This document shows positions 8,941-63,458 of a stretch of DNA of 64,000 nt, piece after piece. Made by a program: the position numbers and the translations under genes. Positions within the stretch are counted from its first letter, which is position 1; each line of letters starts with the position of its first letter. Location: IMG/VR virus record IMGVR_UViG_3300046542_000227, positions 62,001 to 126,000 of that record. One strand, given 5' to 3'. The notes under the pieces are model-generated. The model was not told the origin of the DNA and did not search any database. It was given only the letters and a program-made list of their open reading frames with translations.

Positions 8941-9633
8941 ATGTCCCAGTCTCTCAAAGATCTCATTGCTGCAAACTATCGCAGATTCACTTGGGCCAAC
9001 CATATGGATCCTGCGTTTGGTGAGTATGCACTAGGTGTCGCTCTCGATGTGTTCCAGAATTGGGCACGTGACGAGATCGCATCGCGAGAGCATTTGGTGT
9101 CTGGTAACATTGTGCTATCGCAGTGGTTCGACGAACAATCTGTTCCGATGGTAGCTGAGCTACTAACGGACACCAACTTTCAAACATCCGCTAACGGAAC
9201 CGATGACATGACTGACAAGAACCCTATCGCTAAAACTCTGGCCGTTGTTGAGCGTCACGATCTGGAAGCCAAGATCAAGCTCAACGAGAACAACACCATC
9301 TTCATCCCTGAAGACCTGGTGGAAACCACGGCGGCCATGGACGCTGGTCTGACCATGGACCAAGTGAAGAAGTTCGAGAAGGCTAAGGGCGAACTGCTCC
9401 CGGCCGTAACTTACGTCGCCGGCAAGCTGTCGGTAGACGCCTTCAAGGCTGACCCGAACCTGTCCGAAACCGGCTTCAGCTACAATGTCGGTAAAACGGA
9501 AAAGGTTTCCGGTGTGTTCAGTCGCGACTCCAAAGAGCATGTGGTGGTCGTGGTCGAAACCACGCATCGCAATGCCGAGTTCAATCGTGTCGCCGCTGGC
9601 CTCAACTCGATGTTCGACGACATCAACTCCTGA
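8941..9633 (+). CDS. Hypothetical protein ending in FDDINS motif (alternative start about 9208)
   Basis: GAGGTG RBS; strongly biased codons in the C-terminal 140 aa. Confidence 0.75.
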   Translation: MSQSLKDLIAANYRRFTWANHMDPAFGEYALGVALDVFQNWARDEIASREHLVSGNIVLSQWFDEQSVPMVAELLTDTNFQTSANGTDDMTDKNPIAKTLAVVERHDLEAKIKLNENNTIFIPEDLVETTAAMDAGLTMDQVKKFEKAKGELLPAVTYVAGKLSVDAFKADPNLSETGFSYNVGKTEKVSGVFSRDSKEHVVVVVETTHRNAEFNRVAAGLNSMFDDINS

Positions 9634-9650
9634 CGTCGTCTGCTGTAACT

Positions 9651-9687
9651 GAGAGGGAGCCTTCGGGCTCCTTCTATTATTCTTTTT
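9651..9687 (+). terminator. Intrinsic terminator
   Basis: agggagcc-ttcg-ggctcctt hairpin plus T-rich tail. Confidence 0.75.
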
Positions 9688-9714
9688 AAATTCTCAACCA
9701 CGCAATAAGGATCG

Positions 9715-11016
9715 ATGATGTCTGAAGTTAAATTGGGTCACATGGTAGCAATCGAAGGCAACAACGGTGTTGGTAAGTCGACTCAGGTCGAACTGGTCGC
9801 CGCACGTCTGCGTGCTGCTGGTCATGACGTTGTTGTGGTTCGTGAGCCCGGTGGTTCGGCTTTGGGTGAACACCTGCGTAGCGTGCTGAAAGATCAGCGC
9901 GACATCAAACTGAACAACACCACCGAACTGCTGCTGTTCGGCGCTCAGCGTGACGACATGTACCGCACCGTGGTACGTCCTGCTCTGGACGCCGGCAAAG
10001 TGGTCCTGGCTGATCGTAGCTACTTCTCCAGCTTCGCCTTCCAGGTTCACCCGTACATTGCACAGAACAACATTCTGCTGCAAGTATTCAACATGATCAC
10101 CTCCATGAGCATCCATCACCTGGGTGGTACTCCGGTGATCGTGTGCAACCTGGCCATGGACGAAGCACTGCGCCTGGAACGTCTGGCTGCGCTGCCGAAG
10201 CGTGAAGAAGACGCTTTCGAAGAACTGCCTGCCGATATCCAGAAACTGGTTGACGAAGCTTACGGCATGCTGGCACAACAGCCGGGCGTGACCACCTTCG
10301 ACGCTACCCGTGAAGTTGAAGAACTGGCTGACGCAATCTTCGATCAGATCCAGGTCAGCATGAACCAGCGCGTACAAGAAGCGGCCATCGCTGCTGAGCA
10401 GGCTGCTGCTCGTGCTGCACAAGCTGAAGTAGAAGATGTTGTTGATGGTGCTCCAGCAAACCCAGCTGCCGAAGCTGAAGCAGCCGCTGCTGATGCACCG
10501 GTTGACATTGCCGTGATCGAAGCTGAGATCAACGACAACATCACCCACCACATCACCAACCTGGTCGGCATGTTCCCAGGCGACTTCAGCGCTCACCAAG
10601 AGCAGTTCGATACTCACGTAGCTTCGCTGCGTAAGTGGGTTGCAATCCACATGGACGAGCTGCGTCTGCGTGAAGAGCCAATGTTCCCACAAGAAGCTCA
10701 ACACCGCACTCAGCAAATCGTCGGCAACATCGGCACCATGCTGGGCGGCTTCCTGACTCTGATCAACATCGGCGAGATGGTTGCCAATGCTGACAAGCTG
10801 GCTGCTGAACTGAAGGTTCGCCAAGAAGCCGAACTGAACGAAGTGGCACCTGAGCTGGTTGATGCACCTGCGGCAGAAGTGTCCGATGCTGAAGTTGCTG
10901 AGCGTCTGCGTGGTCAAACCCCACATGTAGCTCACGTTGACGAAGCTGGTTTCGTGGGTGACGAGTCCGACTCGGCGTACGCTGTTGAAGGTCGTAACGA
11001 AGCACCAGGTCAGTAA
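9715..11016 (+). CDS. tmk: Thymidylate kinase with long acidic C-terminal extension
   Basis: IEGNNGVGKST P-loop, REPGG, ELLLFGAQR, VLADRSYFSSFAFQ. Confidence 0.9.
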   Translation: MMSEVKLGHMVAIEGNNGVGKSTQVELVAARLRAAGHDVVVVREPGGSALGEHLRSVLKDQRDIKLNNTTELLLFGAQRDDMYRTVVRPALDAGKVVLADRSYFSSFAFQVHPYIAQNNILLQVFNMITSMSIHHLGGTPVIVCNLAMDEALRLERLAALPKREEDAFEELPADIQKLVDEAYGMLAQQPGVTTFDATREVEELADAIFDQIQVSMNQRVQEAAIAAEQAAARAAQAEVEDVVDGAPANPAAEAEAAAADAPVDIAVIEAEINDNITHHITNLVGMFPGDFSAHQEQFDTHVASLRKWVAIHMDELRLREEPMFPQEAQHRTQQIVGNIGTMLGGFLTLINIGEMVANADKLAAELKVRQEAELNEVAPELVDAPAAEVSDAEVAERLRGQTPHVAHVDEAGFVGDESDSAYAVEGRNEAPGQ

Positions 11017-11035
11017 AACGAAAAGAAACAGAGAT

Positions 11036-11044
11036 CTATATCAC
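11036..11044 (+). promoter_or_regulatory. Putative early promoter motif CTATATCAC
   Basis: Intergenic motif copy. Confidence 0.6.
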
Positions 11045-11128
11045 CGTACCGGTGGGTTGTACAACATTCGATGCCTGATTGTGTGCAACCACCCGTCGGT
11101 GGTATACCTTAGCCCTTAGGAGCAAAGC

Positions 11129-11701
11129 ATGAAATGGTTTTCCGCTGTTGTATTGACAGCACTCGCGTTGATGGTAAGTCCAGCTTGGGCTGGTTGTGAT
11201 CTGTCGCAGTCCGGTGTACCCATTGCAATACGTGGGCAACTGGAAACTCAATGCCTTCAAGCTGAAGCGAAGGTCAAAGAGCAAGCCCAGATCACTGACA
11301 CACAGAAACTCTCGGCTTATGCTGATGTAGCTACCCAACTGGCTAAGGCCGTGGGTATCGCAGCTAAAGAGCTGGGTGTGGCTGTCAACGAGTTCATCCT
11401 GACTCCAGCGGGTATCCTGACCATCGCTGTGATCCTGGTTAAGGTGTTCGGTAAACTGGCTAGCCTCATTATCGTGGCGTTCCTGCTGAACCTGATCTCG
11501 TTCAAACTGATGAAGTTACTGTGGCGTCGTGATACTGACCGCACTGTCGAAACCACTGGCTGGTTCGGTTTCTTCAAGCGCACCATCCCTGTACGTGAAA
11601 CCGTCACCTACCGTGAAGCATCGGAAGGTCAAGTGTTCTGTACTGGCTTGCTGGTCATCATCTGCTTCGGTTCCCTGATCGCTGTGCCAATCTTCAGCTA
11701 A
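11129..11701 (+). CDS. Membrane protein with signal peptide
   Basis: AGGAG RBS; signal peptide ending PAWA; 2-3 hydrophobic helices. Confidence 0.75.
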   Translation: MKWFSAVVLTALALMVSPAWAGCDLSQSGVPIAIRGQLETQCLQAEAKVKEQAQITDTQKLSAYADVATQLAKAVGIAAKELGVAVNEFILTPAGILTIAVILVKVFGKLASLIIVAFLLNLISFKLMKLLWRRDTDRTVETTGWFGFFKRTIPVRETVTYREASEGQVFCTGLLVIICFGSLIAVPIFS

Positions 11702-11793
11702 GTTCTACTTGGCGGGTATTGGTATGTGAAATCCCCTGTGCCTTGGTTCCCTACCTTAATGGTCGTGAGCAAAAAACGTGCAAGGCACGGACG

Positions 11794-11827
11794 GACATAA
11801 CCCCCGCCTTCGGGCGGGGTTTTATGC
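11794..11827 (+). terminator. Intrinsic terminator with CATAA/TTATG flanks
   Basis: ccccgcc-ttcg-ggcgggg hairpin plus ttttatg. Confidence 0.8.
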
Positions 11828-11861
11828 TGTCCATCTGAATATCTCCTGTGAGGAATAACCC

Positions 11862-12431
11862 ATGCAAGGTAACATCGAAATCGTAAACCTGAAGCAACCA
11901 GTTCGTGTAGCTACCGATGCAGAGGTCGATGCATTGCTGCGTGATCAGCCTGCACCGGATCTGATCAAACGTCGTGACCACAGCACCGCTGCGATCATGG
12001 CCCACATCGAGGCCAACCGTCTGGCCGATGGTACCTTCGCTGTGTACGACCACCAGGGCATCTACACCAAGTGGTGCCGTCACATCCGTAACACGATCGT
12101 GCCGGATGTCGATTCCAAGGTTTACGACATCCAAGTCAAGGATGCTTTCGTTTACCAAGGTCGCAATGCGGCTGGTCCATACGAGCGTGTGGTATTCCGT
12201 ACTGCATCGCGCTACGGCTTCGGCAAGGTTCTGTTCCTGGAACGCATGGGTTTCGAAGAAGACGCACCAGTCCGTTTGGCCTGTGCTGAAGGTTGGGCGA
12301 ACTTGCCTCCACTGGCTGCTGATGCTGAGGTTCCGGTGGTGATGCCGATGCTCAATGGCGTGCACACGCCAGTCTACACTGAGCCATCGAACATCGCCGC
12401 TATCCATGCTGGCGCTAACTCACTGTTGTAA
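11862..12431 (+). CDS. Hypothetical protein
   Basis: GAGGA RBS, 189 aa. Confidence 0.7.
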   Translation: MQGNIEIVNLKQPVRVATDAEVDALLRDQPAPDLIKRRDHSTAAIMAHIEANRLADGTFAVYDHQGIYTKWCRHIRNTIVPDVDSKVYDIQVKDAFVYQGRNAAGPYERVVFRTASRYGFGKVLFLERMGFEEDAPVRLACAEGWANLPPLAADAEVPVVMPMLNGVHTPVYTEPSNIAAIHAGANSLL

Positions 12432-12441
12432 GGACTGAACC

Positions 12442-13109: not shown

Positions 13110-13183
13110 TAGCATGTAGCTCAGTTGGATAGAGCATCAGCATTTGACGCTGGATGTCGCGGGTTCGAATCCCGCCATGCTAT
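13110..13183 (+). tRNA. tRNA with UUG anticodon (Gln), atypical
   Basis: Acceptor tagcatg/catgcta, D arm gctc/gagc, anticodon loop atTTGac, T arm gcggg-ttcgaat-cccgc; no encoded CCA. Confidence 0.8.
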
Positions 13184-13203
13184 CTACTGACATGGTGAAA
13201 TGA

Positions 13204-13668
13204 ATGTTGAATGAAATTGCTGTACGTACACTGCCTGCTGCTAATCGGGTTATCCGTTCGATAGAACTGAAAGAGGTTTCCGTTAACTCTAAAGAGATAA
13301 CGTGGCGGTCTCCTGATCAGCGGCAAGCGTTGGTGATTGTGTTAGAATCTGGATGGTCTTTGGTGCTGGTGGATGCGTGCGGGCAGTGCTGCTGCGAAGA
13401 ACGCTACATGAGCACTGAAGATGATCTGGAATCCCTGGTGGGTGAAACACTGATGGGCATCCGTCACGGCGGCACTTCTGAAAAGGAGGCTGACTATGGT
13501 GTGGTTGAGGCAGAGTTTGTGCACATCCAAACCGATCGTGACTCCGTTTGTATCGGGACGTACAATGAGAACAATGGCTACTACGGTGGCTTAGACCTTG
13601 TTGTGACGATACTCGATCCAGAGGGTAATGTGGTTGTTTATCAGAAGAGCTTAACCGGGGAGGATTAA
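13204..13668 (+). CDS. Hypothetical phage protein (NGYYGG motif)
   Basis: 154-aa ORF; CCCE and NENNGYYGG motifs. Confidence 0.65.
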   Translation: MLNEIAVRTLPAANRVIRSIELKEVSVNSKEITWRSPDQRQALVIVLESGWSLVLVDACGQCCCEERYMSTEDDLESLVGETLMGIRHGGTSEKEADYGVVEAEFVHIQTDRDSVCIGTYNENNGYYGGLDLVVTILDPEGNVVVYQKSLTGED

Positions 13669-13729: not shown

Positions 13730-14293
13730 ATGGAAACTGTCAACCGCTTCAAAGAGAAACAAGAGATCGATGAAGCCACTAAAGCCCAAGTCGATCTGGC
13801 TGGGTTCTTCGGTTCACTGGTCGGCGATCCAACAGAGCCACCACTCTGGATGTTGGTTACAGCCCTGCAATCGGAGCTGGCTAAGACCGAGCACCGTAAG
13901 CAGCATCTGGGTTACATCGTCAACGTCTCTAAAGAAGAGAACTCGGTGGCTGTGTTGTGGCAATCCCAAGTACGCGGTGCTCCACAAACCTTCCTGTCGG
14001 TTCAAGCGACCAAGCGCGACATCCCTGTCCTGCATGAGATCATTCCGTCTGAGATCCTTGACGAATACCTCGCGATGATCCAGGACATCAACAGCAACGA
14101 TACGGGTGTTGCTAGTGGTCTGGTGCAGATGGCTATCGATGGTTTCAAAGAACATCTGGTGACTTGCTTGGATGGTGATCCTGAGCAGAACCACTACTTG
14201 CTCCAGGCTTACACCAAAGACCGCAAGTGGCTCTTGGACATCCAAGTCTACTACGACGTAATCCAAGACGACCTTCAGCACCAAAGCCAGTAA
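13730..14293 (+). CDS. Hypothetical protein
   Basis: AGGA RBS, 187 aa. Confidence 0.7.
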   Translation: METVNRFKEKQEIDEATKAQVDLAGFFGSLVGDPTEPPLWMLVTALQSELAKTEHRKQHLGYIVNVSKEENSVAVLWQSQVRGAPQTFLSVQATKRDIPVLHEIIPSEILDEYLAMIQDINSNDTGVASGLVQMAIDGFKEHLVTCLDGDPEQNHYLLQAYTKDRKWLLDIQVYYDVIQDDLQHQSQ

Positions 14294-15149: not shown

Positions 15150-15234
15150 GGGTAGGTTCCCGAGCGGCCAAAGGGATCAGACTGTAAATCTGACGTCTAC
15201 GACTTCGAAGGTTCGAATCCTTCTCTGCCCACCA
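15150..15234 (+). tRNA. tRNA-Tyr (GTA)
   Basis: Canonical type II cloverleaf, loop ctGTAaa, ends ACCA. Confidence 0.95.
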
Positions 15235-15235: not shown

Positions 15236-15311
15236 TCCAGCATAGCTCAGTCGGTAGAGCAGCAGACTGTTAATCTGTTGGTCCCTGGTTCGAATCCAGG
15301 TGCTGGAGCCA
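15236..15311 (+). tRNA. tRNA-Asn (GTT)
   Basis: tccagca/tgctgga acceptor, loop ctGTTaa, ends GCCA. Confidence 0.95.
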
Positions 15312-26160: not shown

Positions 26161-26562
26161 ATGTTAATCGATCAAATTCTAATGCACATGGCTTTAGTAC
26201 GTGGTTTACGTCTGTGCCGTGTGAGTACGCAACGCTTCGATTTGAAGACTGCTTTAGATAGCGACAAGCCAGTGATCTTCTGGCACACCAGTAATGGTAT
26301 CGACTATCTGGGCTATGAACTGCTCACCACCGATCGGTTCAATAGTCATGTGCCATTCGGTCACTTGCACAGTAAGATCGAATGCTACCACGGTGGCTAT
26401 CGTGTCCACGGTATCTGTGGTAGCTTCTTTCTGGAATATGGAGGGGTGTTGGTAAAGGCTACCGAGATATGGCCAGTTGACTTAATCGCGTATCTCGGTG
26501 ATGGCTTGGTGGATCGTTACCGAGTTGGTATATCGATGGAGCACAAACAGGTGCCGCAATGA
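26161..26562 (+). CDS. Hypothetical protein
   Basis: GAGG RBS. Confidence 0.6.
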   Translation: MLIDQILMHMALVRGLRLCRVSTQRFDLKTALDSDKPVIFWHTSNGIDYLGYELLTTDRFNSHVPFGHLHSKIECYHGGYRVHGICGSFFLEYGGVLVKATEIWPVDLIAYLGDGLVDRYRVGISMEHKQVPQ

Positions 26563-27227
26563 ATGGGAAAGACTTCTTCGATCTAGCAGGACCATGGGCT
26601 GGCATTGGTAGCCGTGAGGCACCGATGCCGGTACAGGTTCTTATGACCCGTTACGCTCGTACCGTCTACGACTTAAAGATGGGTCCATTGCACAGTGGCG
26701 ACGCTATCGCTTCTGACTTTGCGTTCTGGGTAGGCGCACGGCTGTCCAAGAACTTCTTTGAGCTCGGCGCCAAGATCTTCCTTTATAAGAACGGCTATCA
26801 AAACCGTTGGCATGATGATCAACTGGGTTTCATTAACGTCAAGACCTTTGACCCTGAGATCCGTGCAGAAGCAGAAGAACTCGCCCGGGTAGCTCGTAAT
26901 GGTTTCTGGGGTTTGGGTGCTGGCGGTATTGGTTTGGTCTCACGTAACCCATTTCAGTTGCTGGATGTGGATCTAAAACACCCGGTGGCTAAATGTTTGT
27001 ATTGGGGTATCCCACAGGGCAAGACAGAGAAAGTCCGGGGTGGTACTAACGTCGGTCTGCAGATCGCCATTCGCTTTAACATTCCTCGGATGAATTTGTA
27101 CTATGAAGAAAACCAAGCGCTCCTTCAAACGTGGCTCGAAGAAAAAGAAACCGCAGAAGGATACCCGGCCGATCTTACTCGAATTATCGATTCCCGCCGA
27201 GACGACTATCCATACCCAGGCTTCTAA
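26559..27227 (+). CDS. DprA/SLOG-like Rossmann-fold protein
   Basis: AGIGSRE, HSGDA..SD.AF, RN..QLL and GGT motifs. Confidence 0.65.
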   Translation: MNGKDFFDLAGPWAGIGSREAPMPVQVLMTRYARTVYDLKMGPLHSGDAIASDFAFWVGARLSKNFFELGAKIFLYKNGYQNRWHDDQLGFINVKTFDPEIRAEAEELARVARNGFWGLGAGGIGLVSRNPFQLLDVDLKHPVAKCLYWGIPQGKTEKVRGGTNVGLQIAIRFNIPRMNLYYEENQALLQTWLEEKETAEGYPADLTRIIDSRRDDYPYPGF

Positions 27228-27456
27228 GATCGAGCTGATCAAAACCCATGCCGACCAGATCGCTGGCGACATGTTGTTCACTCGGGACAATCTGGTTAAC
27301 TCGATTGATCCTGAACAAGTCTATACCGCCGAACAAGTCACTGACTATATTGACGAAGGCATTCAAGGCGTACTCGGGGTTCTGCACAAACAAGTAGAAC
27401 CTTGGAGCATGACCATTGACATCTGCCAATCCTATTTCGACAAGATCAATAACTGA
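27103..27456 (+). CDS. DIN-motif family protein (ends YFDKINN); start uncertain
   Basis: Resembles 54646 ORF (LFTRDNLVN vs LSFNRDKAVN). Confidence 0.55.
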   Translation: MKKTKRSFKRGSKKKKPQKDTRPILLELSIPAETTIHTQASKIELIKTHADQIAGDMLFTRDNLVNSIDPEQVYTAEQVTDYIDEGIQGVLGVLHKQVEPWSMTIDICQSYFDKINN

Positions 27457-27935: not shown

Positions 27936-28410
27936 AGCAATGCAAGGACAAAAGCGAGAGCAGCGGCTGGCGCAGTTGGCTTCATATTGCCCTAGTGCAA
28001 CGATCATGAAACTGGCTGATCTCGTACGACGGGGAACCACCGGTACTCGGGTGTGCCAATATCCTGACCGTACTCGGCCTGCGTTGTTCTACTTCACTGA
28101 AGACCTCGAACCCGGTGAAGCACTGTTGCATCTGCTACGTGAGTTCAACGTACAGAACGGACACGGGGCAATCAGCGAATCCAACTACGAGGAGCACGTT
28201 ACTCGCTTCTTTGAAACCTTTACGTCATTGGGTTGGGAAATCTACTATGGCGGGTGCTATGAGGCACAGAGTATTTACGAGCAGGTTTTAAAACACGAAC
28301 TGGACCGTGGCCGCGTCGTTGGCATTGCATGGTCAGCATTAGAGGATGATGGTGATGTCCACAGTAGCTATCGAACACCGCTTGAAAGAAACAGTAGCGA
28401 CACCAACTGA
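27913..28410 (+). CDS. Hypothetical protein
   Basis: GAGGTGG RBS. Confidence 0.65.
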   Translation: MLPVQHFKAMQGQKREQRLAQLASYCPSATIMKLADLVRRGTTGTRVCQYPDRTRPALFYFTEDLEPGEALLHLLREFNVQNGHGAISESNYEEHVTRFFETFTSLGWEIYYGGCYEAQSIYEQVLKHELDRGRVVGIAWSALEDDGDVHSSYRTPLERNSSDTN

Positions 28411-29053
28411 TCTGCTGAAGGCGTTGCATGTTGATCATCCGTACTACATGTGGGATGACGAGATGACCCGTTACGATGGTATCGGTGCATTCCTCGAATA
28501 CTGGCGCGCCTACGACATCGATCTCAACCGGGTTATCCGTTGGGATATTCATGCGGTATCGGAGAACTACCCCGATGCCAGTGAGATGACTGAGGAGGAC
28601 ATCAAGTACTACGGTCCACATGGTTCGCAGTATGCCGATATCTACTTCTTGGCTCCGCGTAAGGGTAACTTGTTTACTCACCGGATTCAGAACCTTAAGC
28701 CCGGCGACACCCCACGGTTGTTTACGTTCCTTAAGCGTCACTGGGAACACACCAAGCTGTTGTGGGAACCACTACCCAACCTAGAGTACTGTCCGCCTAC
28801 CACGCCGCGCAGTCGCTTCTTGGATGAGGTCCAAGCGATTACCGATCGTCGTCTGGAGATGGAGCCTAATGTCGCACGGCATATCACTGACTACGTACAT
28901 GAACGGGTCAAGGGCGCCGTGGGCGATGTACTGAGTCTGGTGGACCGTGGGTACCTGTTGTTCGAGAAACCCAAGTCGGAAGATCAACCACTCGACATTA
29001 ATCTCAGCATCGCTGGTGAGCTGGGCAACCTATTCAACGAGATCAACTCATGA
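28346..29053 (+). CDS. Hypothetical protein with C-terminal DIN-family domain (ends FNEINS)
   Basis: VKGAVGDVLSLVDRGYLL...SIAGELGNLFNEINS. Confidence 0.7.
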   Translation: MMVMSTVAIEHRLKETVATPTDLLKALHVDHPYYMWDDEMTRYDGIGAFLEYWRAYDIDLNRVIRWDIHAVSENYPDASEMTEEDIKYYGPHGSQYADIYFLAPRKGNLFTHRIQNLKPGDTPRLFTFLKRHWEHTKLLWEPLPNLEYCPPTTPRSRFLDEVQAITDRRLEMEPNVARHITDYVHERVKGAVGDVLSLVDRGYLLFEKPKSEDQPLDINLSIAGELGNLFNEINS

Positions 29054-34603: not shown

Positions 34604-35068
34604 ATGGATTTTAAGCAATACAACCGTAAAGTCATGGATCACTTGATGGGCCTGCTCGAAGCATCCGAGATGGACCATTGGAACATGATCTTCGATCCGG
34701 CACACCTCGACCCGCAACAAGGCTTGCACAAGTACGCACAGCCCGATGGCATGCTGGTGTTGAACTTCAATCCGATGGCCTGCCGTGAGTTTCATTTGGG
34801 TGAAGAACACATCACATGCAACATGTCTCTGCGGGGGCATAAGACTCACCTCGTACTGCCGTTCTATGCGGTGCGTGGTATTCAACTCGAAATCCAAGGC
34901 GTGCCAATTGTAGTCCCGGCGGACATGGCTGTCCTTATTATCGACCAAGGCGTTGCTCCTGATCAGGAGCGTCGTGCTGAACCAGAGCCGATGCCATTGA
35001 CTGGCGTCGCTGGTAAAGTAGTTCCCCTGTTTGGCAACCGTAACCCATCCTCAACGAAAGAGTCCTAG
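34604..35068 (+). CDS. sspB: SspB-like ClpXP adaptor
   Basis: DGMLVLNFNP.A......E.ITCNMSL.G....VLPF.AV.GI resembles the SspB core; flexible tail. Confidence 0.7.
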   Translation: MDFKQYNRKVMDHLMGLLEASEMDHWNMIFDPAHLDPQQGLHKYAQPDGMLVLNFNPMACREFHLGEEHITCNMSLRGHKTHLVLPFYAVRGIQLEIQGVPIVVPADMAVLIIDQGVAPDQERRAEPEPMPLTGVAGKVVPLFGNRNPSSTKES

Positions 35069-37029: not shown

Positions 37030-37350
37030 ATGGATATTTCTATTAAGTTGCCTGACCCTCTGCAGATTGCCAAAGAAGGGTTGTTGGAAGAGGTCATGGC
37101 TTCCGCTCGTTACAATGCTGATTGGACCATGGAGAAGCGGGATCTGACCGATGAAGTCCGTGAGTTGGTGCACTACGCTGCTCGTAACGTGGCTTGCGGC
37201 ATCATGGACATCCTCGATGGCAATACCGATCAGGGTCAGTATGTTCTGCTGCCACTGTCTGTAGTCACAGGTTTTACCGATGAACTCCCGACTATGGCTG
37301 GGGATCTGTCGGAACAACTCCAAGACCTTTACGAAACGATCAACGACTGA
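37030..37350 (+). CDS. DIN-motif family protein (ends YETIND)
   Basis: GAGGTG RBS; tandem paralog 1. Confidence 0.75.
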   Translation: MDISIKLPDPLQIAKEGLLEEVMASARYNADWTMEKRDLTDEVRELVHYAARNVACGIMDILDGNTDQGQYVLLPLSVVTGFTDELPTMAGDLSEQLQDLYETIND

Positions 37351-37358
37351 GGTGTGGC

Positions 37359-37718
37359 ATGAACGCTGACAAAGATTCACCGCTGGGTAAGGCTATTAAT
37401 AGCGCAGTGGCCCGAGCTACCGCCGGTAAGCCTGATGAACCACGGTTGGTTCACCACATGCTACACCAACCCCGCGTTGACTTCATTGAGAAGGTACTGG
37501 ATGCGCGTGACGACGCCTATGAAGACGTCATGGTGCAACTTCCGCCTGAGTTCCACGAACCGGTCCATAAGGCCATTACAGCAGCCGTGGTGAAAACATT
37601 GGGTGCTCTCGATGAGGGCTATGTATTATTGCCTAATCCCGACCCCGATGATGCCTTCAACCTAGCTGGTGATCTGGCTGTTATCTTCAGTACCATCTAC
37701 GACGATGTCAATACCTGA
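37359..37718 (+). CDS. DIN-motif family protein (ends YDDVNT)
   Basis: GAGGTG RBS; LDEGYVLLP...NLAGDL. Confidence 0.75.
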   Translation: MNADKDSPLGKAINSAVARATAGKPDEPRLVHHMLHQPRVDFIEKVLDARDDAYEDVMVQLPPEFHEPVHKAITAAVVKTLGALDEGYVLLPNPDPDDAFNLAGDLAVIFSTIYDDVNT

Positions 37719-37725
37719 GGTGGCT

Positions 37726-38046
37726 ATGAATCTGGAATTGATTTTGCCGGATCCCATGAAGGAAGCCAAGCAAATCTTCCTGAGTGACGTGGTGAATATG
37801 CGTGAAGCCGCTATCTTGCTACATGCCACCAATCGTGAAGACCCCTTCGAAGGTCCTGTGGCTAATGCCGTTAATTACCTAACTGGTAATTTCTTGGAAT
37901 ACCTCGACGGTGGGGAGAAATGCAACGCGGGCTATACGGTGCTACCCAACCGGATGCTGCGCGGTGGTACTGAAGGTACGTTACCCAATATCGCGGGTGA
38001 GCTGTACTTGGACTACGCTGCTTTGTTCGAAGATATCAACGACTGA
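37726..38046 (+). CDS. DIN-motif family protein (ends FEDIND)
   Basis: GAGGTG RBS; LPDP N-terminus shared with 37030; LDG...GYTVLP...NIAGEL. Confidence 0.75.
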   Translation: MNLELILPDPMKEAKQIFLSDVVNMREAAILLHATNREDPFEGPVANAVNYLTGNFLEYLDGGEKCNAGYTVLPNRMLRGGTEGTLPNIAGELYLDYAALFEDIND

Positions 38047-43030: not shown

Positions 43031-43792
43031 ATGCAAATTGAAAAGGATCCAGTAACCGATGGTCCGTTGATACGGGTGCGTTTTCAAGTGCCGGGTAGTA
43101 CTAGTCCGGTGAATTGGCCGATTCCGTATCCTTCATGGTGTTCTGGTAGCAACAGTCAGGGTAACTATGTTGTTGCCTATGTTAAAGACACCGAGACCCT
43201 GTTGAAGAACTGGCCTGACGCATTCGACATCGATGTCTTTGAAGAAGGGTTACAAGAGGTCACTTATACCGACCGCTTCCCACGGCCAGTACACATGACT
43301 CCTGAAGGGATGGCTAAGGCTCTAGAGGACTACAAGGGGTATCCCGTCTACGGAGAAACTGGTGCCTTTGCGTATACGAAAGATGGCTATGATCAGGCAT
43401 GTCGTGCTATCCGGAAGTTTCCGAAGGTATGGTCACCTGCTGACGATCTTGACCTTGATGCTAATCTCCGGATCCATCAGGCTAATGCCGCGGTATGGGG
43501 TAAGCCGGTTGAACTGCAAGAGGCGATGATCAATGCCCCGGTAGATCCTGCACTGTGGGCAACTCGCCAGCTCTATTGGGAACTGTCTAAGGGTATCCAT
43601 GACACCATCGAACTTACATGTGGTCTAGACTACAAAGAGTCTCAATATGTCACCGGAAAGGTTATGGCACATATCGGCAGGACCCTACAGGGCGATGGCG
43701 TTGATGACGGTTACTTTGTAGCGCATCGTTGTGAGCCAGACGTAGACCTTAGTCTGCACATGGCTTCTTATTTTGATGACATTAATACCTAG
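43031..43792 (+). CDS. Hypothetical protein with C-terminal DIN-family domain (ends YFDDINT)
   Basis: GAGGTG RBS; DDGYFV...DLSLHMASYFDDINT. Confidence 0.7.
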   Translation: MQIEKDPVTDGPLIRVRFQVPGSTSPVNWPIPYPSWCSGSNSQGNYVVAYVKDTETLLKNWPDAFDIDVFEEGLQEVTYTDRFPRPVHMTPEGMAKALEDYKGYPVYGETGAFAYTKDGYDQACRAIRKFPKVWSPADDLDLDANLRIHQANAAVWGKPVELQEAMINAPVDPALWATRQLYWELSKGIHDTIELTCGLDYKESQYVTGKVMAHIGRTLQGDGVDDGYFVAHRCEPDVDLSLHMASYFDDINT

Positions 43793-54645: not shown

Positions 54646-54945
54646 ATGGCTAAGAAGACAGCACAGACATCCGTAGAAGAACTCGAAGAAGTCATGACCA
54701 TGATTGCTGATAGTTTCTATACGGTGTTGAGCTTTAATCGAGATAAGGCGGTTAACCTACTGACTGAAGAGGGGATGTCAGAAGCTAGACGAGATCTGGT
54801 GAGTCAAGCGGTGAATGCTGGCGTGCGTGCCACACTGTCTACGGTTGAGGAACTCAATGGTGAAGTACGGTTCAAGACACGTGGTGTCACTGCGATCCTT
54901 TCAGGGGATCTGGTTAGAGGGATGTTTGATGAGATCAACAACTGA
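54646..54945 (+). CDS. DIN-motif family protein (ends FDEINN)
   Basis: AGGAGG RBS; AGVRATLSTVEELN. Confidence 0.75.
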   Translation: MAKKTAQTSVEELEEVMTMIADSFYTVLSFNRDKAVNLLTEEGMSEARRDLVSQAVNAGVRATLSTVEELNGEVRFKTRGVTAILSGDLVRGMFDEINN

Positions 54946-59259: not shown

Positions 59260-59655
59260 ATGCAAGACGATGACGATGCAGTAGTTGTAGATCCGGAACT
59301 CGAAATGGAGGACCGTGAGGAAGAGGACGATGAGGAAACCACTGAAGCAGATCGCACGATCGAAGAGCAACAGCGCGAACTGATCGAAGGCATTCAGCAC
59401 ATCATCGAACCTCTGATCGAAGCCAACCCGGAACACCGGCCGTCCATCGAGTCAACTGCTGAGGGTATCCTCGGGTTGATCGAGGGTAATGGTCGTGACG
59501 AGGGCTACATTCTCGTTAAGCGTACCGACGCCGACATGGCCGTAGTGCCGTGTACCCGTGCTGTTTACGAAGAACATTTGCGTGACTTCGTAACCCCGGA
59601 AGGCCTGGACATCTCGGTAGGTCTGTTGTCGATCTTCGACGACGTCAATAGCTAA
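59260..59655 (+). CDS. DIN-motif family protein with acidic N-terminus (ends FDDVNS)
   Basis: GGAG RBS; GILGLIEG...EGYILV...DISVGL. Confidence 0.75.
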   Translation: MQDDDDAVVVDPELEMEDREEEDDEETTEADRTIEEQQRELIEGIQHIIEPLIEANPEHRPSIESTAEGILGLIEGNGRDEGYILVKRTDADMAVVPCTRAVYEEHLRDFVTPEGLDISVGLLSIFDDVNS

Positions 59656-59658
59656 GCC

Positions 59659-59710: not shown

Positions 59711-60322
59711 ATGAGCACTAGTGTATATCCCGTAGTGGGACGACTCAAGAATCGGTCAATGCGCCTTGAGTATAAACAGGAGGGCGATGTACTTGGCCTG
59801 ACTGGGTTGGCACCAGATGCCTTTGAATTCATGTACCCTGACTCGCATGGCCCTAAAGATGATACTAACATCTTTACCCATGTGTACGACAACTACCCGC
59901 TGTTCGCATGGCTGGCTGATGTTCGTGGTGATAGTCAACCAACCGCTGGTCTGAAAGAACGACATGAGCGTACACTGCAGTTCATTGACTGGATTGGTAA
60001 TGACCCGGGGGTTAGTTACGTTGATCCGACTCAGAACAAGAACCCCAAAGAAAGCATGTACGAGCATTACTTCGAGGGTTGGCGCAATCTGGTCATGTAT
60101 ACCGTCGATGAATTACTTGCCTTCAACTACGACGCCGTGGCATACGTCCAAAAAGGGTATGACGAACAGCACAACCATACCTACGCGCCACACCCGGAAT
60201 TATTAACGTGGCGTGAATGTTTCGAAGGACGTAACGATAACGGCTGTACCAAAGGCTACTTCGAGTTCTTGGCTGAAACAAAGGCTAAGGGTTGGGACTT
60301 CATCATCTTCGCATTTGACTGA
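59711..60322 (+). CDS. Hypothetical phage protein
   Basis: NY.LFA.LADVR and ELLAFNYD motifs. Confidence 0.7.
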   Translation: MSTSVYPVVGRLKNRSMRLEYKQEGDVLGLTGLAPDAFEFMYPDSHGPKDDTNIFTHVYDNYPLFAWLADVRGDSQPTAGLKERHERTLQFIDWIGNDPGVSYVDPTQNKNPKESMYEHYFEGWRNLVMYTVDELLAFNYDAVAYVQKGYDEQHNHTYAPHPELLTWRECFEGRNDNGCTKGYFEFLAETKAKGWDFIIFAFD

Positions 60323-60331
60323 GTAGACAAC

Positions 60332-60901
60332 ATGAACCGCGACACCATTTACATTGTAATCACTACCAACATGTACATTCATCGTAAACTGTTGGCTATG
60401 TTTACCCGAGCACTTAAACCGTTTGAACTGGAAGTCGAGGCCGCCCGTACGCCGCAAATACCGACCTACGCCAGCAGCTACTTCAACCGTGACACGCTGA
60501 AGGTCGTGATCAGCGAACACATGTCGCAATATCCGCTCCGTATGGAACCGGATCACCCACAACCGGCGCATCGGATTATCCCTCCGGTACCTGATACCCC
60601 TTTTACCGACCACGTAAACATTGCCGTAATCGGTAGTGTGCACAGCGGCAAGACCTCGGTACAGGAACTGTTGCAAAATACCCTGCTGGCTAATGGTATC
60701 CCTGTCGACAATATCCTTCTGCATAGCCTGGATCACGGTATCGGGCCACGACTGTTGTCACTGGAAGAACAAGCCGACTGTATTCGCAAGATGCCAGCAC
60801 GCAAGATCATGTTCCTGTTCCAGAGCCCAAAACGGGCTACCGATGCTTCGGCATTGATGGAACGTTGTGGTGTACGTAAGACCGTACCAGAACAAACCTG
60901 A
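60332..60901 (+). CDS. Protein with P-loop-like motif
   Basis: IAVIGSVHSGKTS. Confidence 0.6.
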   Translation: MNRDTIYIVITTNMYIHRKLLAMFTRALKPFELEVEAARTPQIPTYASSYFNRDTLKVVISEHMSQYPLRMEPDHPQPAHRIIPPVPDTPFTDHVNIAVIGSVHSGKTSVQELLQNTLLANGIPVDNILLHSLDHGIGPRLLSLEEQADCIRKMPARKIMFLFQSPKRATDASALMERCGVRKTVPEQT

Positions 60902-60904
60902 CAT

Positions 60905-60913
60905 CTATATCAC
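60905..60913 (+). promoter_or_regulatory. Putative early promoter motif CTATATCAC
   Basis: Intergenic motif copy. Confidence 0.6.
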
Positions 60914-60942
60914 CCAATTGAATTCTAACGAGTAAAACACAC

Positions 60943-61233
60943 ATGGCACGCCAAACTAACAATGAGCTGGTCCGTATGCCCGGCTTCTTCTACTACCCTT
61001 CTGACAAAGAAGGTCTCGAATTCCTGACCATGGAACAACGTATTGAGATCATGGCTAACCAAGGTAACTACACCATGGTTGGTATGTTGGTCCCACACGA
61101 ATCCAGTCCGTTCTACGTGGACCTCCACTGCAACCTCGACAATGGTCGCATCCCAACTCACCGTCGCCCTGACGCCGTTATCCCGTCTTACGGTAACGTA
61201 CCCTTCGATCTACGTGAGGTTCTCGCTACATGA
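60943..61233 (+). CDS. Hypothetical protein
   Basis: Phage-like codons. Confidence 0.65.
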   Translation: MARQTNNELVRMPGFFYYPSDKEGLEFLTMEQRIEIMANQGNYTMVGMLVPHESSPFYVDLHCNLDNGRIPTHRRPDAVIPSYGNVPFDLREVLAT

Positions 61234-61640
61234 GAAAGCAGAAGTTCTATTTCGGTAAGCGCAAGGTTAATCACATCGATGGCAAGATCGCCAGTCAGTG
61301 GGCGGTGCCTACACTGTTGCGTGAATACTTCATCCTGCGTCAGCGTCTGCGCATGATGTTCTTCAGCATGAAGATCGCCATGAACTCTCGTGTCGGTCTG
61401 GGTACCAACACCAATGCCACGTACGGCATGATGGGTGGTGCTAGAAAGATCCTCACTCCAGCGGAAGCTGAGGTGATTCCGGACGAGTCGAAAGACTACT
61501 ACACCGGTTGCATGCTCCACCGACGTAAGATCGCCAAGGCGTTGGACCGTCGTACTACTTACTCGTTCCAGCGTTTGCGGGCGGTCTTCACTGACGCCAA
61601 ATATTTCATGGATCCTCAAGTTCAGGAAGCAACAGCATGA
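61230..61640 (+). CDS. Hypothetical basic protein
   Basis: ATGA overlap. Confidence 0.65.
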   Translation: MRKQKFYFGKRKVNHIDGKIASQWAVPTLLREYFILRQRLRMMFFSMKIAMNSRVGLGTNTNATYGMMGGARKILTPAEAEVIPDESKDYYTGCMLHRRKIAKALDRRTTYSFQRLRAVFTDAKYFMDPQVQEATA

Positions 61641-62245
61641 CAACGATTGCATTTGATGGTGTAACCCTGGCAGCAGACAGTCAGTCCACGCGCCAACTCC
61701 CCAGTAAAGACAAATGCATGTCGTGCGATGTTGAACTGACCGGCACCAAGCGTGACGTCACCAAGGTCAACTACTACCCACGGCTGACCATCACCTTTCA
61801 AGGCGAACCTGTTATTGCCTGGGCTGGTGCCGGTAATGCTCCGCTGATCGAGATGTTCAGTGAAGGGTTGCGCCAAGGTGTCGAGATCAAAGCGATCGGC
61901 AAGATGGCCGCTAAGGTCAATGCTGAACGTATGACCCAGCCGACTATGACCATGTTGGTTGTAACTGCATTTACCTGCTACGAAGTCCAGTACCATTTCC
62001 GGATGGGTGCGCAGGTGAAAGAAATCACCAAGTTTCCCTATTCCATAGGGTCAGGTTCGAAGGCAGCACTATTGGCAATGAAGCGCTTGGGCTTTACTGC
62101 CCCAGCCGCTGTTGCTTGTGGCATAGACGTAGACCCGCACTCTGGCGGAGAAGTGTGCTATGTAAACTGCCGCGGTAAGGCGAAGGAACGCGAGCTATTG
62201 CGTTATACCTACAGTCCTGCCGATATAGACGAATTGTTCGAATAA
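61637..62245 (+). CDS. HslV/proteasome-like Ntn peptidase
   Basis: N-terminal MTTIA..G..LAADS, AGAG, SIGSGS..A, D..SGG. Confidence 0.75.
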   Translation: MTTIAFDGVTLAADSQSTRQLPSKDKCMSCDVELTGTKRDVTKVNYYPRLTITFQGEPVIAWAGAGNAPLIEMFSEGLRQGVEIKAIGKMAAKVNAERMTQPTMTMLVVTAFTCYEVQYHFRMGAQVKEITKFPYSIGSGSKAALLAMKRLGFTAPAAVACGIDVDPHSGGEVCYVNCRGKAKERELLRYTYSPADIDELFE

Positions 62246-62305
62246 CCCTACCCCTCCCGCCGTTGGGAGGGGTTTATTCCGTCATCTCCTTATAAGGAAA
62301 AACCC

Positions 62306-63109
62306 ATGAATACGCAAGCAGCTGCCTTCCTCGGTACCTACGGTTCTTACTATCAATCCGTGTGTGACGACGTGCAGATCGCGTTGGGTAATGTGAACGC
62401 CCAAGCCCTGTTCGATTCCATCGTTGTTAAAGAATGCCTGACCAGTACTGAGCTGGATGCGGCCATCCATAGCCTGCGTGATCTGGTACCGGGTCTGGGT
62501 TATAGCCAGGGTCAGAATCACATCTTCCGTGTCCTGGGCTACCGTAGCTGTGGTCTGGCTTTCGAGATCCGTAAGGTCTGGTCGTCGGTCTGGCAACACA
62601 AGGAGCTGTCCCACCCTAACCTGTGGCATCAGTTCCTTTACGTCAACATGACCGATTCGGTATTCGGTTCCCGTGACTACAGCAAAGACCAGTGGAGCCT
62701 GCACTACATCGAGTTCCTGTTTGAACCGTTGTTGCGTGGGTTGATCCAGTACGAAGACCAAGTCCCTGAGGTATTGGCCAATACGTTCCTGACCATGCTG
62801 AACATCTCGCAACAGAAGACAATGAGCATGCCTATGGTGCGCACTCTGGCCGATCAGATCGAACATGAGATGAACGGTACCGTTCGGCACACCACGGCCA
62901 TGAACCTCGTTGCAGTGGCTCTGGGCTACAAGACCTGGCCTGCGATGTTGGAATGCTGCCATGACTCCACCATCAACAACCGTCGTCACCCAAGTCGCTT
63001 CGGCATTGCCCGCTGGATCGTAGAACCACCACTGAACGGTGACCTCTCTGCGTTGAAAGCAGCTGGCATGATCGACGCTATTGGTAGTTACCCAACTGCC
63101 CGCGAGTGA
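62306..63109 (+). CDS. Hypothetical protein
   Basis: TAAGGA RBS; H..A.NLVA.ALGY.TW motif. Confidence 0.7.
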   Translation: MNTQAAAFLGTYGSYYQSVCDDVQIALGNVNAQALFDSIVVKECLTSTELDAAIHSLRDLVPGLGYSQGQNHIFRVLGYRSCGLAFEIRKVWSSVWQHKELSHPNLWHQFLYVNMTDSVFGSRDYSKDQWSLHYIEFLFEPLLRGLIQYEDQVPEVLANTFLTMLNISQQKTMSMPMVRTLADQIEHEMNGTVRHTTAMNLVAVALGYKTWPAMLECCHDSTINNRRHPSRFGIARWIVEPPLNGDLSALKAAGMIDAIGSYPTARE

Positions 63110-63188
63110 AAGAAATACCCCCCAAGGTATAGTGTGTAGAAATACCACTTCCCAATAAAACCCCAACCAAAAGAAAAAGGATTACCCC

Positions 63189-63458
63189 ATGACCATCTCC
63201 GCCATCGCATCCAGCATCAAAGCCTCCGTAGCCGCAGAACTGGCTAACGTACAACTCCCGGAAGGCGTTGAAGTATCGGCCGAAGTGCAACAGTCCATCG
63301 CCGACGCTGGTGTTCGCGGTACTCTGAACGCCATCGGCGAACTGAACAATGCCAATGTCGTCTACATCAGCGGTTCGGTTGAAGAAGGCAACGACGACGT
63401 CGCCAGCTTCTCCCCATCCGAAATCCTGGGCGAGCTGTTCGGTTCCGTGAACTCGTAA
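63189..63458 (+). CDS. DIN-motif family protein (ends FGSVNS)
   Basis: AGVRGTLNAIGELN resembles 54646. Confidence 0.75.
   Translation: MTISAIASSIKASVAAELANVQLPEGVEVSAEVQQSIADAGVRGTLNAIGELNNANVVYISGSVEEGNDDVASFSPSEILGELFGSVNS

What the first reader, a model, noticed from the sequence alone, without database searches (positions are those of the whole stretch)
8941..63458. Ten dispersed proteins share a terminal [FY]xx[IV]N[STDN]-stop motif: candidate tagging or docking system
Seen: C-termini are MFDDINS (9633), YFDKINN (27456), LFNEINS (29053), LYETIND (37350), IYDDVNT (37718), LFEDIND (38046), YFDDINT (43792), MFDEINN (54945), IFDDVNS (59655) and LFGSVNS (63458). Asn is always the penultimate residue. 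Nine also show parts of an upstream pattern (helix 'AV/GV..vL..lD/E', 'GY.L.P', '[ND][IL][AS]G.L'). The domain stands alone (90-130 aa), forms a tandem triplet (37030-38046), or is fused behind unrelated domains (28346, 43031). The 8941 protein appears to share only the tail. Inference: fixed spacing to the free carboxylate in otherwise diverged proteins suggests a peptide that docks into one receptor. Candidates are phage-nucleus or virion sorting machinery, a protease adaptor (an SspB-like and an HslV-like gene are in this window), or a host hub; the motif loosely resembles the acidic SSB tail FDDDIPF.
Basis: partly seen in the sequence, partly recalled or inferred. Interest (0 to 1): 0.88.

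Follow-up and report, generated by a model that had tools for sequence, protein, structure and literature searches.

The report
Shared C-terminal tail on jumbo-phage proteins
Ten small proteins of a nucleus-forming Pseudomonas jumbo phage end in the same seven-residue tail: nine are copies of one new protein family and the tenth is an unrelated protein that phage phiKZ needs for normal growth, so the tail probably plugs all of them into one still-unknown partner.

Summary
All ten genes end in [FY]xx[IV]N[STDN]-stop. About 0.01 such ends are expected by chance, and the motif is not enriched inside proteins.

The window comes from a relative of Pseudomonas phage Noxifer, a nucleus-forming jumbo phage. 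Noxifer carries 10 strict tails plus 2 near-tails, all in the syntenic block.

Nine of the ten proteins are paralogs of one new C-terminal domain of about 90 residues. It has no Pfam match and no PDB fold match. It always sits at the protein's end, and twice it follows an unrelated N-terminal domain.

The tenth protein (8941) belongs to the phiKZ gp186 family. It shares only the tail with the other nine.

About 80 homologs end at the motif; two carry 2-4 extra acidic residues. AlphaFold2 places the tail in the last turns of an amphipathic helix.

My best reading is a docking helix that needs a free end and brings varied N-terminal parts to one shared partner, possibly associated with the phage nucleus (confidence about 0.45). 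No partner was identified. A purely structural or oligomerisation role is the main rival. The proposed links to the HslV-like gene, the SspB-like gene and SSB tails are unsupported.

The parts
8941..9633 (+). 230-aa protein of the phiKZ gp186 family (tail MFDDINS). The C-terminal 133 aa (9232-9630) is the conserved gp186-like part. It shares only the tail with the other nine.
   Evidence: phrog_16459 at E 5.6e-33. tblastn finds 68 records, all Pseudomonas phages, including phiKZ-like, PhiPA3 and PA1C. Fourteen metagenome homologs all end in [LM]F..[IV]N[SN]. hhalign result. AF2 model.
27103..27456 (+). Short member of the tail-domain family (tail YFDKINN). The start is uncertain: 27103 overlaps the DprA-like gene by 125 nt, and 27271 would give 61 aa, matching the Noxifer annotation.
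   Evidence: The Noxifer ortholog is annotated at 61 aa.
28346..29053 (+). Fusion protein. The N-terminal domain (about aa 1-145) also occurs in KVP40-like Vibrio phages, where only that part aligns. The tail domain follows at 28766-29050 (tail LFNEINS).
   Evidence: phrog_7880 at E 2e-43. The tblastn hits in Vibrio phages cover aa 24-143 only. Domain HMM hit at aa 150-235.
37030..37350 (+). Tandem copy 1, 106 aa, stand-alone tail domain (tail LYETIND).
   Evidence: phrog_18616 at E 1e-30. AF2 gives pLDDT 81.7 with helices at 10-36, 41-62, 76-80 and 93-105.
37359..37718 (+). Tandem copy 2, 119 aa (tail IYDDVNT).
   Evidence: phrog_18616 at E 1.3e-20.
37726..38046 (+). Tandem copy 3, 106 aa (tail LFEDIND). 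The ORF opens at 37669, but the ATG at 37726 has a GAGG ribosome-binding site and matches the Noxifer gene length.
   Evidence: phrog_18616 at E 3e-33.
43031..43792 (+). Fusion protein. The N-terminal domain (aa about 7-86) is shared with PaBG, RsoM2USA, crAss-like and Klebsiella phages. The tail domain follows at about 43490-43789 (tail YFDDINT). The Noxifer protein with the nearest tail (gp285), taken here as its counterpart, has a different N-terminal part.
   Evidence: domain HMM hit at aa 166-253; 19% identity to Noxifer gp285 outside the tail.
54646..54945 (+). Stand-alone tail domain, 99 aa (tail MFDEINN).
59260..59655 (+). Tail domain with a very acidic N-terminal extension, 131 aa (tail IFDDVNS).
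   Evidence: About 20 orthologs all end in F[DN]D[IV]N[SNT].
63189..63458 (+). Smallest member, 89 aa (tail LFGSVNS), about 1 kb downstream of the HslV-like gene.
34604..35068 (+). Context only: a possible SspB-like protein. No link to the tails was shown.
   Evidence: Pfam SspB at E 3.3e-4 and 21.2 bits, below the 27-bit cut-off. The top PDB hits are all SspB, but with E 0.14-0.8. The 201phi2-1 homolog is annotated as an SspB domain protein.
61637..62245 (+). Context only: an HslV-family (Ntn) peptidase-like protein beginning MTTIAFDG. No link to the tails was shown.
   Evidence: phrog_1040 at E 1.7e-21; sequence. Among isolated phages only Noxifer has it. The 26 loci around more distant relatives carry no real tail gene.

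Best explanation
Shown:
- The window is part of a Noxifer-like, nucleus-forming (chimallivirus) Pseudomonas jumbo phage.
- It encodes a lineage-specific, expanding family of small proteins. The family is defined by a C-terminal module of about 90 residues: a helical hairpin, a GY.L.P segment, then a final capped amphipathic helix.
- That helix always ends in hydrophobic-[FY]-[DE]-[DE]-[IV]-N-[STDN] followed by the free carboxyl end.
- The same end is carried by the otherwise unrelated phiKZ gp186 family.

Inferred:
- The last two turns of this helix act as a docking element that needs a free C-terminus.
- It brings different N-terminal parts (variable helices, an acidic stretch, two borrowed domains) to one shared partner in the infected cell.
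- That partner is most likely a phage or host protein found in infections by all the Pseudomonas chimalliviruses that carry gp186, and it may be at or inside the phage nucleus.

The partner itself is unknown.
For: 1. Terminal enrichment: 10 observed against 0.01 expected, with no internal enrichment.
2. Whole-genome check in Noxifer: 10 real genes with the strict tail plus 2 near-tails, all within 193-256 kb, the block syntenic to the window.
3. Conservation: in 41 non-redundant members N(-2), [FY](-6) and [IV](-3) are invariant. About 80 homologs end at the motif. Only two extend, by DD and by GEEE.
4. Position of the domain: every confident match from a search of 1.84 billion representative proteins ends at the protein's last residues, including the four longer fusion proteins.
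5. An independent fold carries the same end: the gp186 family matches the domain family only through the tail. It keeps the tail across phiKZ-like, PA1C and Psa21 phages and distant contigs.
6. Census of 2.9 million viral contigs. For F-D-D-[IV]-N-x-stop in GC-rich codons, all 6 hits are real tail genes in chimallivirus-like jumbo contigs. For F-D-E-I-N-x-stop, the 3 real gene ends are all in the Noxifer clade, and the other 9 hits are chance matches in non-genes.
7. Biology of the gp186 family. phiKZ186 is an early transcript whose antisense knockdown strongly reduced plaques (bioRxiv 10.1101/2024.07.31.605949). PhiPA3 gp222 was labelled by both nuclear-shell (ChmA) and intranuclear (RecA) proximity baits (PMC10643120).
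8. Family dynamics: tandem copy number differs (3 here, 5 in Noxifer), a different N-terminal domain sits before the tail domain in the 43031 protein and its nearest Noxifer counterpart gp285, and 3 tailed genes lie side by side in a distant contig.
Against: - Nine of the ten are paralogs, so common descent alone explains most of the sharing.
- AlphaFold2 models place the tail in a helix with pLDDT about 80. The helix could pack inside the monomer or in a homo-oligomer. I could not read coordinates to measure burial.
- No receptor was identified.
- Two members tolerate short extensions.
- Two gp186 lineages have Ser instead of Asn at -2 (PhiPA3 and locus L047).
- In the 150 kb of phiKZ that I scanned, only gp186 has the tail. 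A hub with many clients is therefore specific to the Noxifer clade.
- The proximity-labelling evidence is weak: gp222 was detected in 1-2 of 3 trials.
Confidence: 0.45

Rival explanations
1. Structural or oligomerisation element. The terminal helix is simply the last core element of the fold, or it forms homo- or hetero-oligomers among the paralogs and gp186. The invariant Asn is a helix C-cap. There is no outside receptor, and the variable N-terminal parts do the real work.
For: - AF2 predicts a helix up to the penultimate residue with moderate-to-good confidence in both families.
- The conserved positions -14, -10, -7, -6 and -3 form one hydrophobic face.
- A conserved [DN][IL]SG.L motif at the start of this helix and Asn at the end look like capping motifs (the reading as helix caps is my own inference).
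- The tail is never found apart from its domain, except in the gp186 family.
Against: - Ordinary domains do not keep an exact end point across paralogs of about 15-30% identity, nor across every fusion.
- An unrelated fold, gp186, carries the same seven residues.
- The tail is more conserved than the rest of each protein.
Confidence: 0.3
2. Degradation tag. The tail marks these early proteins for timed removal by a protease, either the phage HslV-like peptidase (perhaps working with host HslU) or host Clp/Lon, possibly through the SspB-like protein.
For: - An HslV-family gene whose product begins with the Met-Thr expected of an N-terminal-nucleophile peptidase lies in the window, 1 kb upstream of one tail gene.
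- Among isolated phages that gene occurs only in Noxifer, the one isolate with the expanded family.
- A sub-threshold SspB-like gene is present.
- C-terminal degrons are a common bacterial device (my knowledge).
Against: - The 26 viral loci with more distant HslV-like genes have no real tail gene within 10 kb.
- No HslV-like gene is annotated in the 150 kb of phiKZ read, and tblastn found one only in Noxifer, yet phiKZ gp186 keeps the tail.
- The tail does not resemble the ssrA end (my knowledge).
- The tail is predicted to be helical, not unstructured.
- The SspB match is below Pfam's cut-off.
Confidence: 0.1
3. Sorting signal. The tail directs proteins to a compartment: the phage nucleus, the early infection vesicle, or the capsid.
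For: - PhiPA3 gp222 was labelled by nuclear-shell and intranuclear baits (PMC10643120).
- C-terminal targeting signals with fixed spacing to the end are known elsewhere, such as the peroxisomal PTS1 (my knowledge).
Against: - The review PMC12908238 states that cargo is targeted to the phage nucleus through surface residues of the folded protein, not a terminal signal.
- The phiKZ record marks structural proteins but not gp186.
- Known nuclear proteins of these phages lack the tail: no other tail was found in the Noxifer genome.
Confidence: 0.1
4. Chance, or a nucleic-acid signal that overlaps the gene ends.
For: None beyond the shortness of the motif.
Against: - The statistics.
- Synonymous codon variation and all three stop codons.
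- Conservation across phages that share only about 25-40% protein identity in their other shared genes.
- Chance matches in viral contigs fall in non-genes.
Confidence: 0.01

Closest known systems
phiKZ gp186 / PhiPA3 gp222 / 201phi2-1 gp283 family (phrog_16459)
   Same: The 8941 protein is a member. Its C-terminal 133 aa align end to end with these proteins, and the tail is conserved.
   Different: The window protein has an extra N-terminal part of about 97 aa, shared with Noxifer-like phages. The family has no assigned function. The other nine proteins are not members.
PHROG families phrog_18616 and phrog_7880 (unknown function)
   Same: The tandem triplet matches phrog_18616 and the 28346 protein matches phrog_7880.
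   Different: PHROGs splits the family into separate groups, and no other member matched any PHROG family with significance. The unifying C-terminal domain and tail are not captured by any Pfam or PHROG model.
Bacterial SSB C-terminal tail (hub-docking peptide)
   Same: Both are acidic-plus-hydrophobic C-terminal ends that must be terminal, and the inferred logic of one motif with one partner surface is the same (my knowledge).
   Different: The SSB tail ends in an aromatic residue whose side chain and carboxylate are both bound, and it hangs on a disordered linker (my knowledge). Here the last residue is small and polar, the penultimate residue is an invariant Asn, and the segment is predicted helical.
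HslU C-terminal tails and proteasome-activator HbYX motifs docking into HslV or proteasome rings
   Same: Both are C-terminal motifs with fixed spacing to the free carboxylate, and an HslV-family gene is present in the window (motif features from my knowledge).
   Different: HbYX needs a penultimate Tyr; here that residue is Asn. No co-occurrence with HslV-like genes was found beyond the Noxifer clade.
C-terminal polymerase peptides that bind sliding clamps or clamp-like processivity factors (T4/RB69 type; herpesvirus polymerase with UL42)
   Same: Both are short acidic-hydrophobic C-terminal segments, partly helical, that dock onto a replication hub (my knowledge). Chimalliviruses have a clamp-derived protein, Rhc (bioRxiv 10.64898/2026.09.30.755723). 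A gp186-family protein was labelled by an intranuclear RecA bait.
   Different: Nothing was tested here. The Rhc papers report no such peptide interaction. The tail families were found only in Pseudomonas-type phages, whereas Rhc is described in both phiKZ and the E. coli phage Goslar.

Membership tests
phiKZ gp186 family (phrog_16459) | Full-length sequence similarity to family members | tested here: met
   For the 8941 protein only: phrog_16459 at E 5.6e-33 and tblastn to 68 Pseudomonas phage records. The other nine are not members.
New tail-domain family (phrog_18616 and relatives) | A domain match that holds once the tail is removed | tested here: met
   A tail-trimmed HMM retrieves the nine window proteins and their Noxifer counterparts, and nothing else among about 2400 ORFs. 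The window sequences were in the seed, so this is partly circular. An independent seed built from the triplet only reached the 28346 protein and weakly the Noxifer ortholog of 59260.
SSB-Ct-like hub tail | Terminal aromatic or hydrophobic residue at the very end | tested here: not met
   The last residue is S, N, T or D in 40 of 41 non-redundant members and K in one.
SSB-Ct-like hub tail | Tail carried on a disordered linker | tested here: not met
   AF2 predicts a helix at 93-105 of 106 residues and at 115-132 of 133 residues.
ssrA/SspB-type degron | Non-polar C-terminal end (the ssrA type ends in two alanines) and an SspB-binding segment | tested here: not met
   The tails end in N-[STDN]. 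The SspB-like gene itself is below Pfam's cut-off.
HbYX / HslU-tail activators | Hydrophobic residue, then Tyr, then any residue, at the C-terminus | tested here: not met
   The penultimate residue is an invariant Asn.
HbYX / HslU-tail activators | Binding to an HslV or proteasome ring | not testable with these tools
   No complex prediction was available. The neighbourhood test was negative outside the Noxifer clade.
Clamp-binding C-terminal peptide | Binding to a clamp or clamp-like protein | not testable with these tools
   Rhc is known only from the literature.
RsgI-type Asn-Pro autocleavage site | Pro directly after the Asn | tested here: not met
   A profile of the tail hits RsgI (8her_B) exactly at its cleavage-site sequence, but with E 0.12, which is not significant. 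RsgI cleavage requires the Pro (PMC10328401). Here the next residue is S, T, N or D, followed by the stop.
Terminal nuclear-import signal of chimalliviruses | Existence of such a signal | not tested
   The literature states that cargo targeting to the phage nucleus relies on folded surfaces, not a terminal signal (PMC12908238).

The most novel reading that the evidence does not exclude
The tail is a true C-terminal address or coupling tag of nucleus-forming phages. One version: the terminal helix is read by a dedicated phage receptor that places a changing set of early proteins, including the important gp186, at the nuclear shell, the replication machinery or the phage's own HslV-like peptidase. 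A second version: the invariant penultimate Asn takes part in chemistry, such as loss of the last residue or an Asn-Lys cross-link, that attaches the protein to its target.
Probability: 0.12. Interest if true: 0.85.

Novelty: new variant of a known kind. Interest (0 to 1): 0.6.

Why it matters
Nucleus-forming jumbo phages carry hundreds of small early genes of unknown function. Finding what groups them is the main obstacle to studying them.

This finding defines one such group by a simple, testable rule: a seven-residue C-terminal signature. It ties an expanding, fast-changing gene family in Noxifer-like phages to phiKZ gp186, whose knockdown strongly reduced plaque formation.

If the tail is a docking element, one pull-down with a tail peptide could identify a hub used by a dozen phage proteins at once. 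The tail could also serve as a portable handle for sending test proteins to that site.

If it is only structural, the result is still a new, narrowly distributed protein family with a well-defined boundary.

Tried and rejected
- Database searches on the ten proteins gave nothing: no Pfam match and no PADLOC match.
- Foldseek of both AF2 models against the PDB gave nothing with E < 0.08. Against viral models only Noxifer paralogs matched.
- Sequence searches of the two fused N-terminal domains against the PDB gave nothing.
- Remote homology between gp186 and the domain family was rejected, because the match disappears without the tail.
- Mimicry of the chimallin or PhuZ C-termini was rejected, because their ends are unlike the tail.
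- Link to HslV-like peptidases: 26 loci around distant relatives carry no real tail gene.
- The SspB-like gene also has a weak homolog in 201phi2-1 (tblastn E 3e-3), an isolate in which no member of the expanded family was seen, so there is no matching phyletic pattern.
- A tail profile against the PDB hit the RsgI autocleavage site (LFDDVN followed by Pro). E is 0.12, and about 2 such hexamers are expected by chance in the PDB (my estimate). It is kept only as a curiosity.
- The 13730-14293 protein contains an internal MIQDINS and gave a weak hit in one HMM round (E 1e-3). The hit was not reproduced.
- A DNA- or RNA-level explanation was rejected because of synonymous variation.
- One literature search ('KZ186' matched anywhere in a word) returned only DOI fragments.

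Limits:
- AF2 coordinates and predicted-error maps were not available, so burial of the tail could not be measured.
- Only 150 of the 280 kb of phiKZ were scanned.
- The 119-ORF gene set used for the statistics is crude.

Full report
**Observation**

In the six-frame translation of the window the pattern [FY]xx[IV]N[STDN] occurs 11 times on the + strand, and 10 of these sit directly before a stop. On the - strand it occurs once and never at an end.

With the amino-acid composition of a crude set of 119 ORFs, 0.010 terminal matches are expected and 10 are seen. Internal matches number 1 against 1.7 expected. In 2000 residue shuffles no run gave more than one terminal match.

The conserved codons vary synonymously and all three stop codons are used. 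Selection therefore acts on the protein, not on a nucleic-acid signal.

**What genome this is**

The window is positions 62,001-126,000 of IMG/VR contig IMGVR_UViG_3300046542_000227, which is 267 kb long. Its nearest isolated relative is Pseudomonas phage Noxifer (278 kb). Noxifer encodes the nuclear shell protein, PhuZ tubulin and split RNA polymerases, so it is a nucleus-forming chimallivirus.

A six-frame scan of the whole Noxifer genome found 10 real genes ending in the strict motif. All lie between 193 and 256 kb, the block syntenic to the window. Two near-misses are also present: gp285 ends in MFDEING, and gp293 ends in MFLTINE followed by two Asp residues. Orthologs keep the tail better than the rest of the protein, at 76% against 57% identity.

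**Nine of the ten are one protein family**

Alignments show a common C-terminal module of about 90 residues. It has two long helices, a conserved L..[LI][DE]G turn, a GY.L.P segment, and a last helix that opens with [DN][IL][SA]G.L and closes with the tail.

An HMM seeded only from the tandem copies, with the last 8 residues removed from both seed and database, still finds the 28346 protein and weakly finds the Noxifer ortholog of the 59260 protein. A tail-trimmed HMM of the wider family retrieves exactly the tailed proteins of the window and Noxifer, plus gp293 and gp285. It retrieves nothing else among about 2400 ORFs. This second test is partly circular for the window sequences, because they were in the seed.

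The family has no Pfam model, and PHROGs splits it into separate groups of unknown function. AlphaFold2 on the 106-aa copy gives pLDDT 81.7, with helices at 10-36, 41-62, 76-80 and 93-105. No PDB structure resembles it, and among viral models only Noxifer paralogs match.

**How wide the family is, and whether the end is fixed**

A word-indexed search of 5.8 billion proteins returned 38 homologs, all ending in the motif with nothing after it.

A full HMMER scan of 1.84 billion representative proteins returned only 28 hits at E < 1e-3. Every confident match runs to the last residues of the protein, including four longer proteins in which the domain follows another domain. The distant members also end in F..[IV]N[STDNK], and one carries four extra residues (GEEE).

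Among 41 non-redundant members Asn at -2, Phe/Tyr at -6 and Ile/Val at -3 are invariant. Positions -7, -10 and -14 are mostly Leu, which together give one hydrophobic face of a helix.

A distant 27-kb contig has three tailed genes side by side, while its other shared genes are only 25-40% identical to Noxifer's.

Exact DNA patterns for the tail were scanned in 2.9 million viral contigs:
- For F-D-D-[IV]-N-x-stop in GC-rich codons, all 6 hits are real tail genes in jumbo-phage contigs.
- For F-D-E-I-N-x-stop, 3 hits are real gene ends in the Noxifer clade and 9 are chance matches in non-genes.

The 26 unrelated viral loci fetched for another purpose contain no real tail gene.

**The tenth protein**

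The 8941 protein belongs to the phiKZ gp186 family (PhiPA3 gp222, 201phi2-1 gp283). All 68 tblastn hits are Pseudomonas phages. Family members end in FFEDVNS (the phiKZ-like phage PA7, and phiKZ itself), LFEEVNT (PA1C), LFDEISN (PhiPA3) and EIANINS (Psa21). Fourteen metagenome homologs end in [LM]F..[IV]N[SN].

Its predicted fold is different: helices, then a three-stranded sheet, then the terminal helix (pLDDT 73). Profile comparison with the nine-member family gives 80% probability over the last 41 columns, and 0.1% once the last 8 columns are cut from both.

In one distant contig a gp186-like gene and a small family member are adjacent. In the 150 kb of phiKZ that I scanned, which includes the syntenic block, gp186 is the only tailed gene.

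**What is known about gp186**

An antisense screen describes phiKZ186 as an early transcript whose knockdown strongly reduced plaque counts (bioRxiv 10.1101/2024.07.31.605949). The protein appears in the supplementary protein tables of a co-fractionation proteomics study of phiKZ-infected cells (PMC10449902 supplement). PhiPA3 gp222, which has the same accession as the homolog I fetched, appears in proximity-labelling lists for both the nuclear-shell bait ChmA and the intranuclear bait RecA (PMC10643120). A recent review states that cargo is targeted to the phage nucleus through residues on the folded surface, not through a terminal signal (PMC12908238).

**Interpretation**

Five facts argue that the tail has a job of its own that needs a free end:
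- The end point is exact across paralogs of about 15-30% identity.
- The domain is C-terminal in every fusion.
- The tail is more conserved than the rest of each protein.
- The same seven residues appear on an unrelated fold.
- Different N-terminal parts sit in front of it, and a different N-terminal domain precedes it in the 43031 protein and its nearest Noxifer counterpart.

My best reading is a docking helix that brings varied front ends to one partner (confidence 0.45).

The main rival (0.3) is that the helix is a core or oligomerisation element and the Asn is a helix cap. The AlphaFold2 models, which place the tail in a confident helix, fit this rival equally well, and I could not inspect coordinates.

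A degradation tag (0.1) is suggested by the HslV-family gene at 61637-62245 (phrog_1040 at E 1.7e-21; its product begins with Met-Thr) and by a sub-threshold SspB-like gene at 34604-35068. No co-occurrence beyond the Noxifer clade was found.

A sorting signal (0.1) fits the proximity-labelling data but runs against the published view of import.

**Comparison with known systems**

The tail behaves like other C-terminal docking motifs, such as the SSB tail, HslU or HbYX tails, and clamp-binding polymerase ends. It fails the defining residue rule of each: it has no terminal aromatic residue, no penultimate Tyr and no non-polar ssrA-type end. It is therefore not a member of any of them.

A profile of the tail hits the RsgI anti-sigma factor exactly at its Asn-Pro self-cleavage site, but the match is not significant (E 0.12) and the required Pro is absent here.

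**Verdict**

The feature is real, lineage-specific and under strong selection. It defines a new protein family and links that family to a functionally important phiKZ gene. The mechanism remains inferred.

Noticed in passing
window 61637-62245 (+): An HslV-family (N-terminal nucleophile) peptidase-like gene. Its product starts MTTIAFDG and has conserved Cys pairs. It has no Pfam hit, and among about 50,000 phage records tblastn finds it only in Noxifer.
   Followed up: partly
window 34604-35068 (+): A possible SspB-like protein. Pfam SspB gives E 3.3e-4, below the cut-off. The top PDB hits are all SspB but are not significant. The 201phi2-1 homolog is annotated as an SspB domain protein.
   Followed up: partly
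window 13110-13184, 15150-15234, 15236-15311 (+): Three tRNA genes: Gln (ttg), Tyr (gta) and Asn (gtt). Noxifer has a tRNA cluster at the matching place.
   Followed up: no
window 37030-38046 versus Noxifer 223389-225116: The tandem array has 3 copies here and 5 in Noxifer. The fifth Noxifer copy (gp293) has the motif followed by two extra Asp residues.
   Followed up: partly
window 43031-43792 versus Noxifer gp285 (228714-229244): Both proteins end in the same C-terminal tail domain but carry different N-terminal parts. The window's N-terminal 80 aa is shared with PaBG, RsoM2USA, a crAss-like phage and a Klebsiella phage, and tblastn found no Noxifer match for the whole 43031 protein. Treating the two as counterparts rests on tail similarity and gene order, not on a synteny test.
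   Followed up: partly
window 59260-59655 (+): This family member has a very acidic N-terminal stretch of about 35 residues (runs of D and E) and an insert containing a conserved Cys. Both features are conserved in about 20 orthologs.
   Followed up: no
window 13730-14293 (+): A 187-aa protein with an internal MIQDINS and a domain-like LDGD...HYLL segment. It gave a weak HMM hit in one round that was not reproduced. It may be a decayed family member.
   Followed up: partly
window 13204-13668 (+): Pfam DUF7448 at E 1e-13, above the cut-off.
   Followed up: no
window 26559-27456 (+): The long form of the 27456-ending gene overlaps the DprA-like gene by 125 nt. Noxifer annotates only a 61-aa product, so the true start is unclear.
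   Followed up: partly
L047 4716-5120: In a distant contig, a gene with a precomputed Pfam Acb2/Tad1 hairpin hit (a family of anti-defence sponge proteins, from my knowledge) lies about 1.6 kb upstream of the gp186-like gene. The window protein in the corresponding position (8249-8659) has no such Pfam hit.
   Followed up: no
PDB 8her_B residues 76-93: The RsgI anti-sigma factor has LFDDVN immediately before its Asn-Pro self-cleavage site. This is a non-significant but curious match to the tail.
   Followed up: yes
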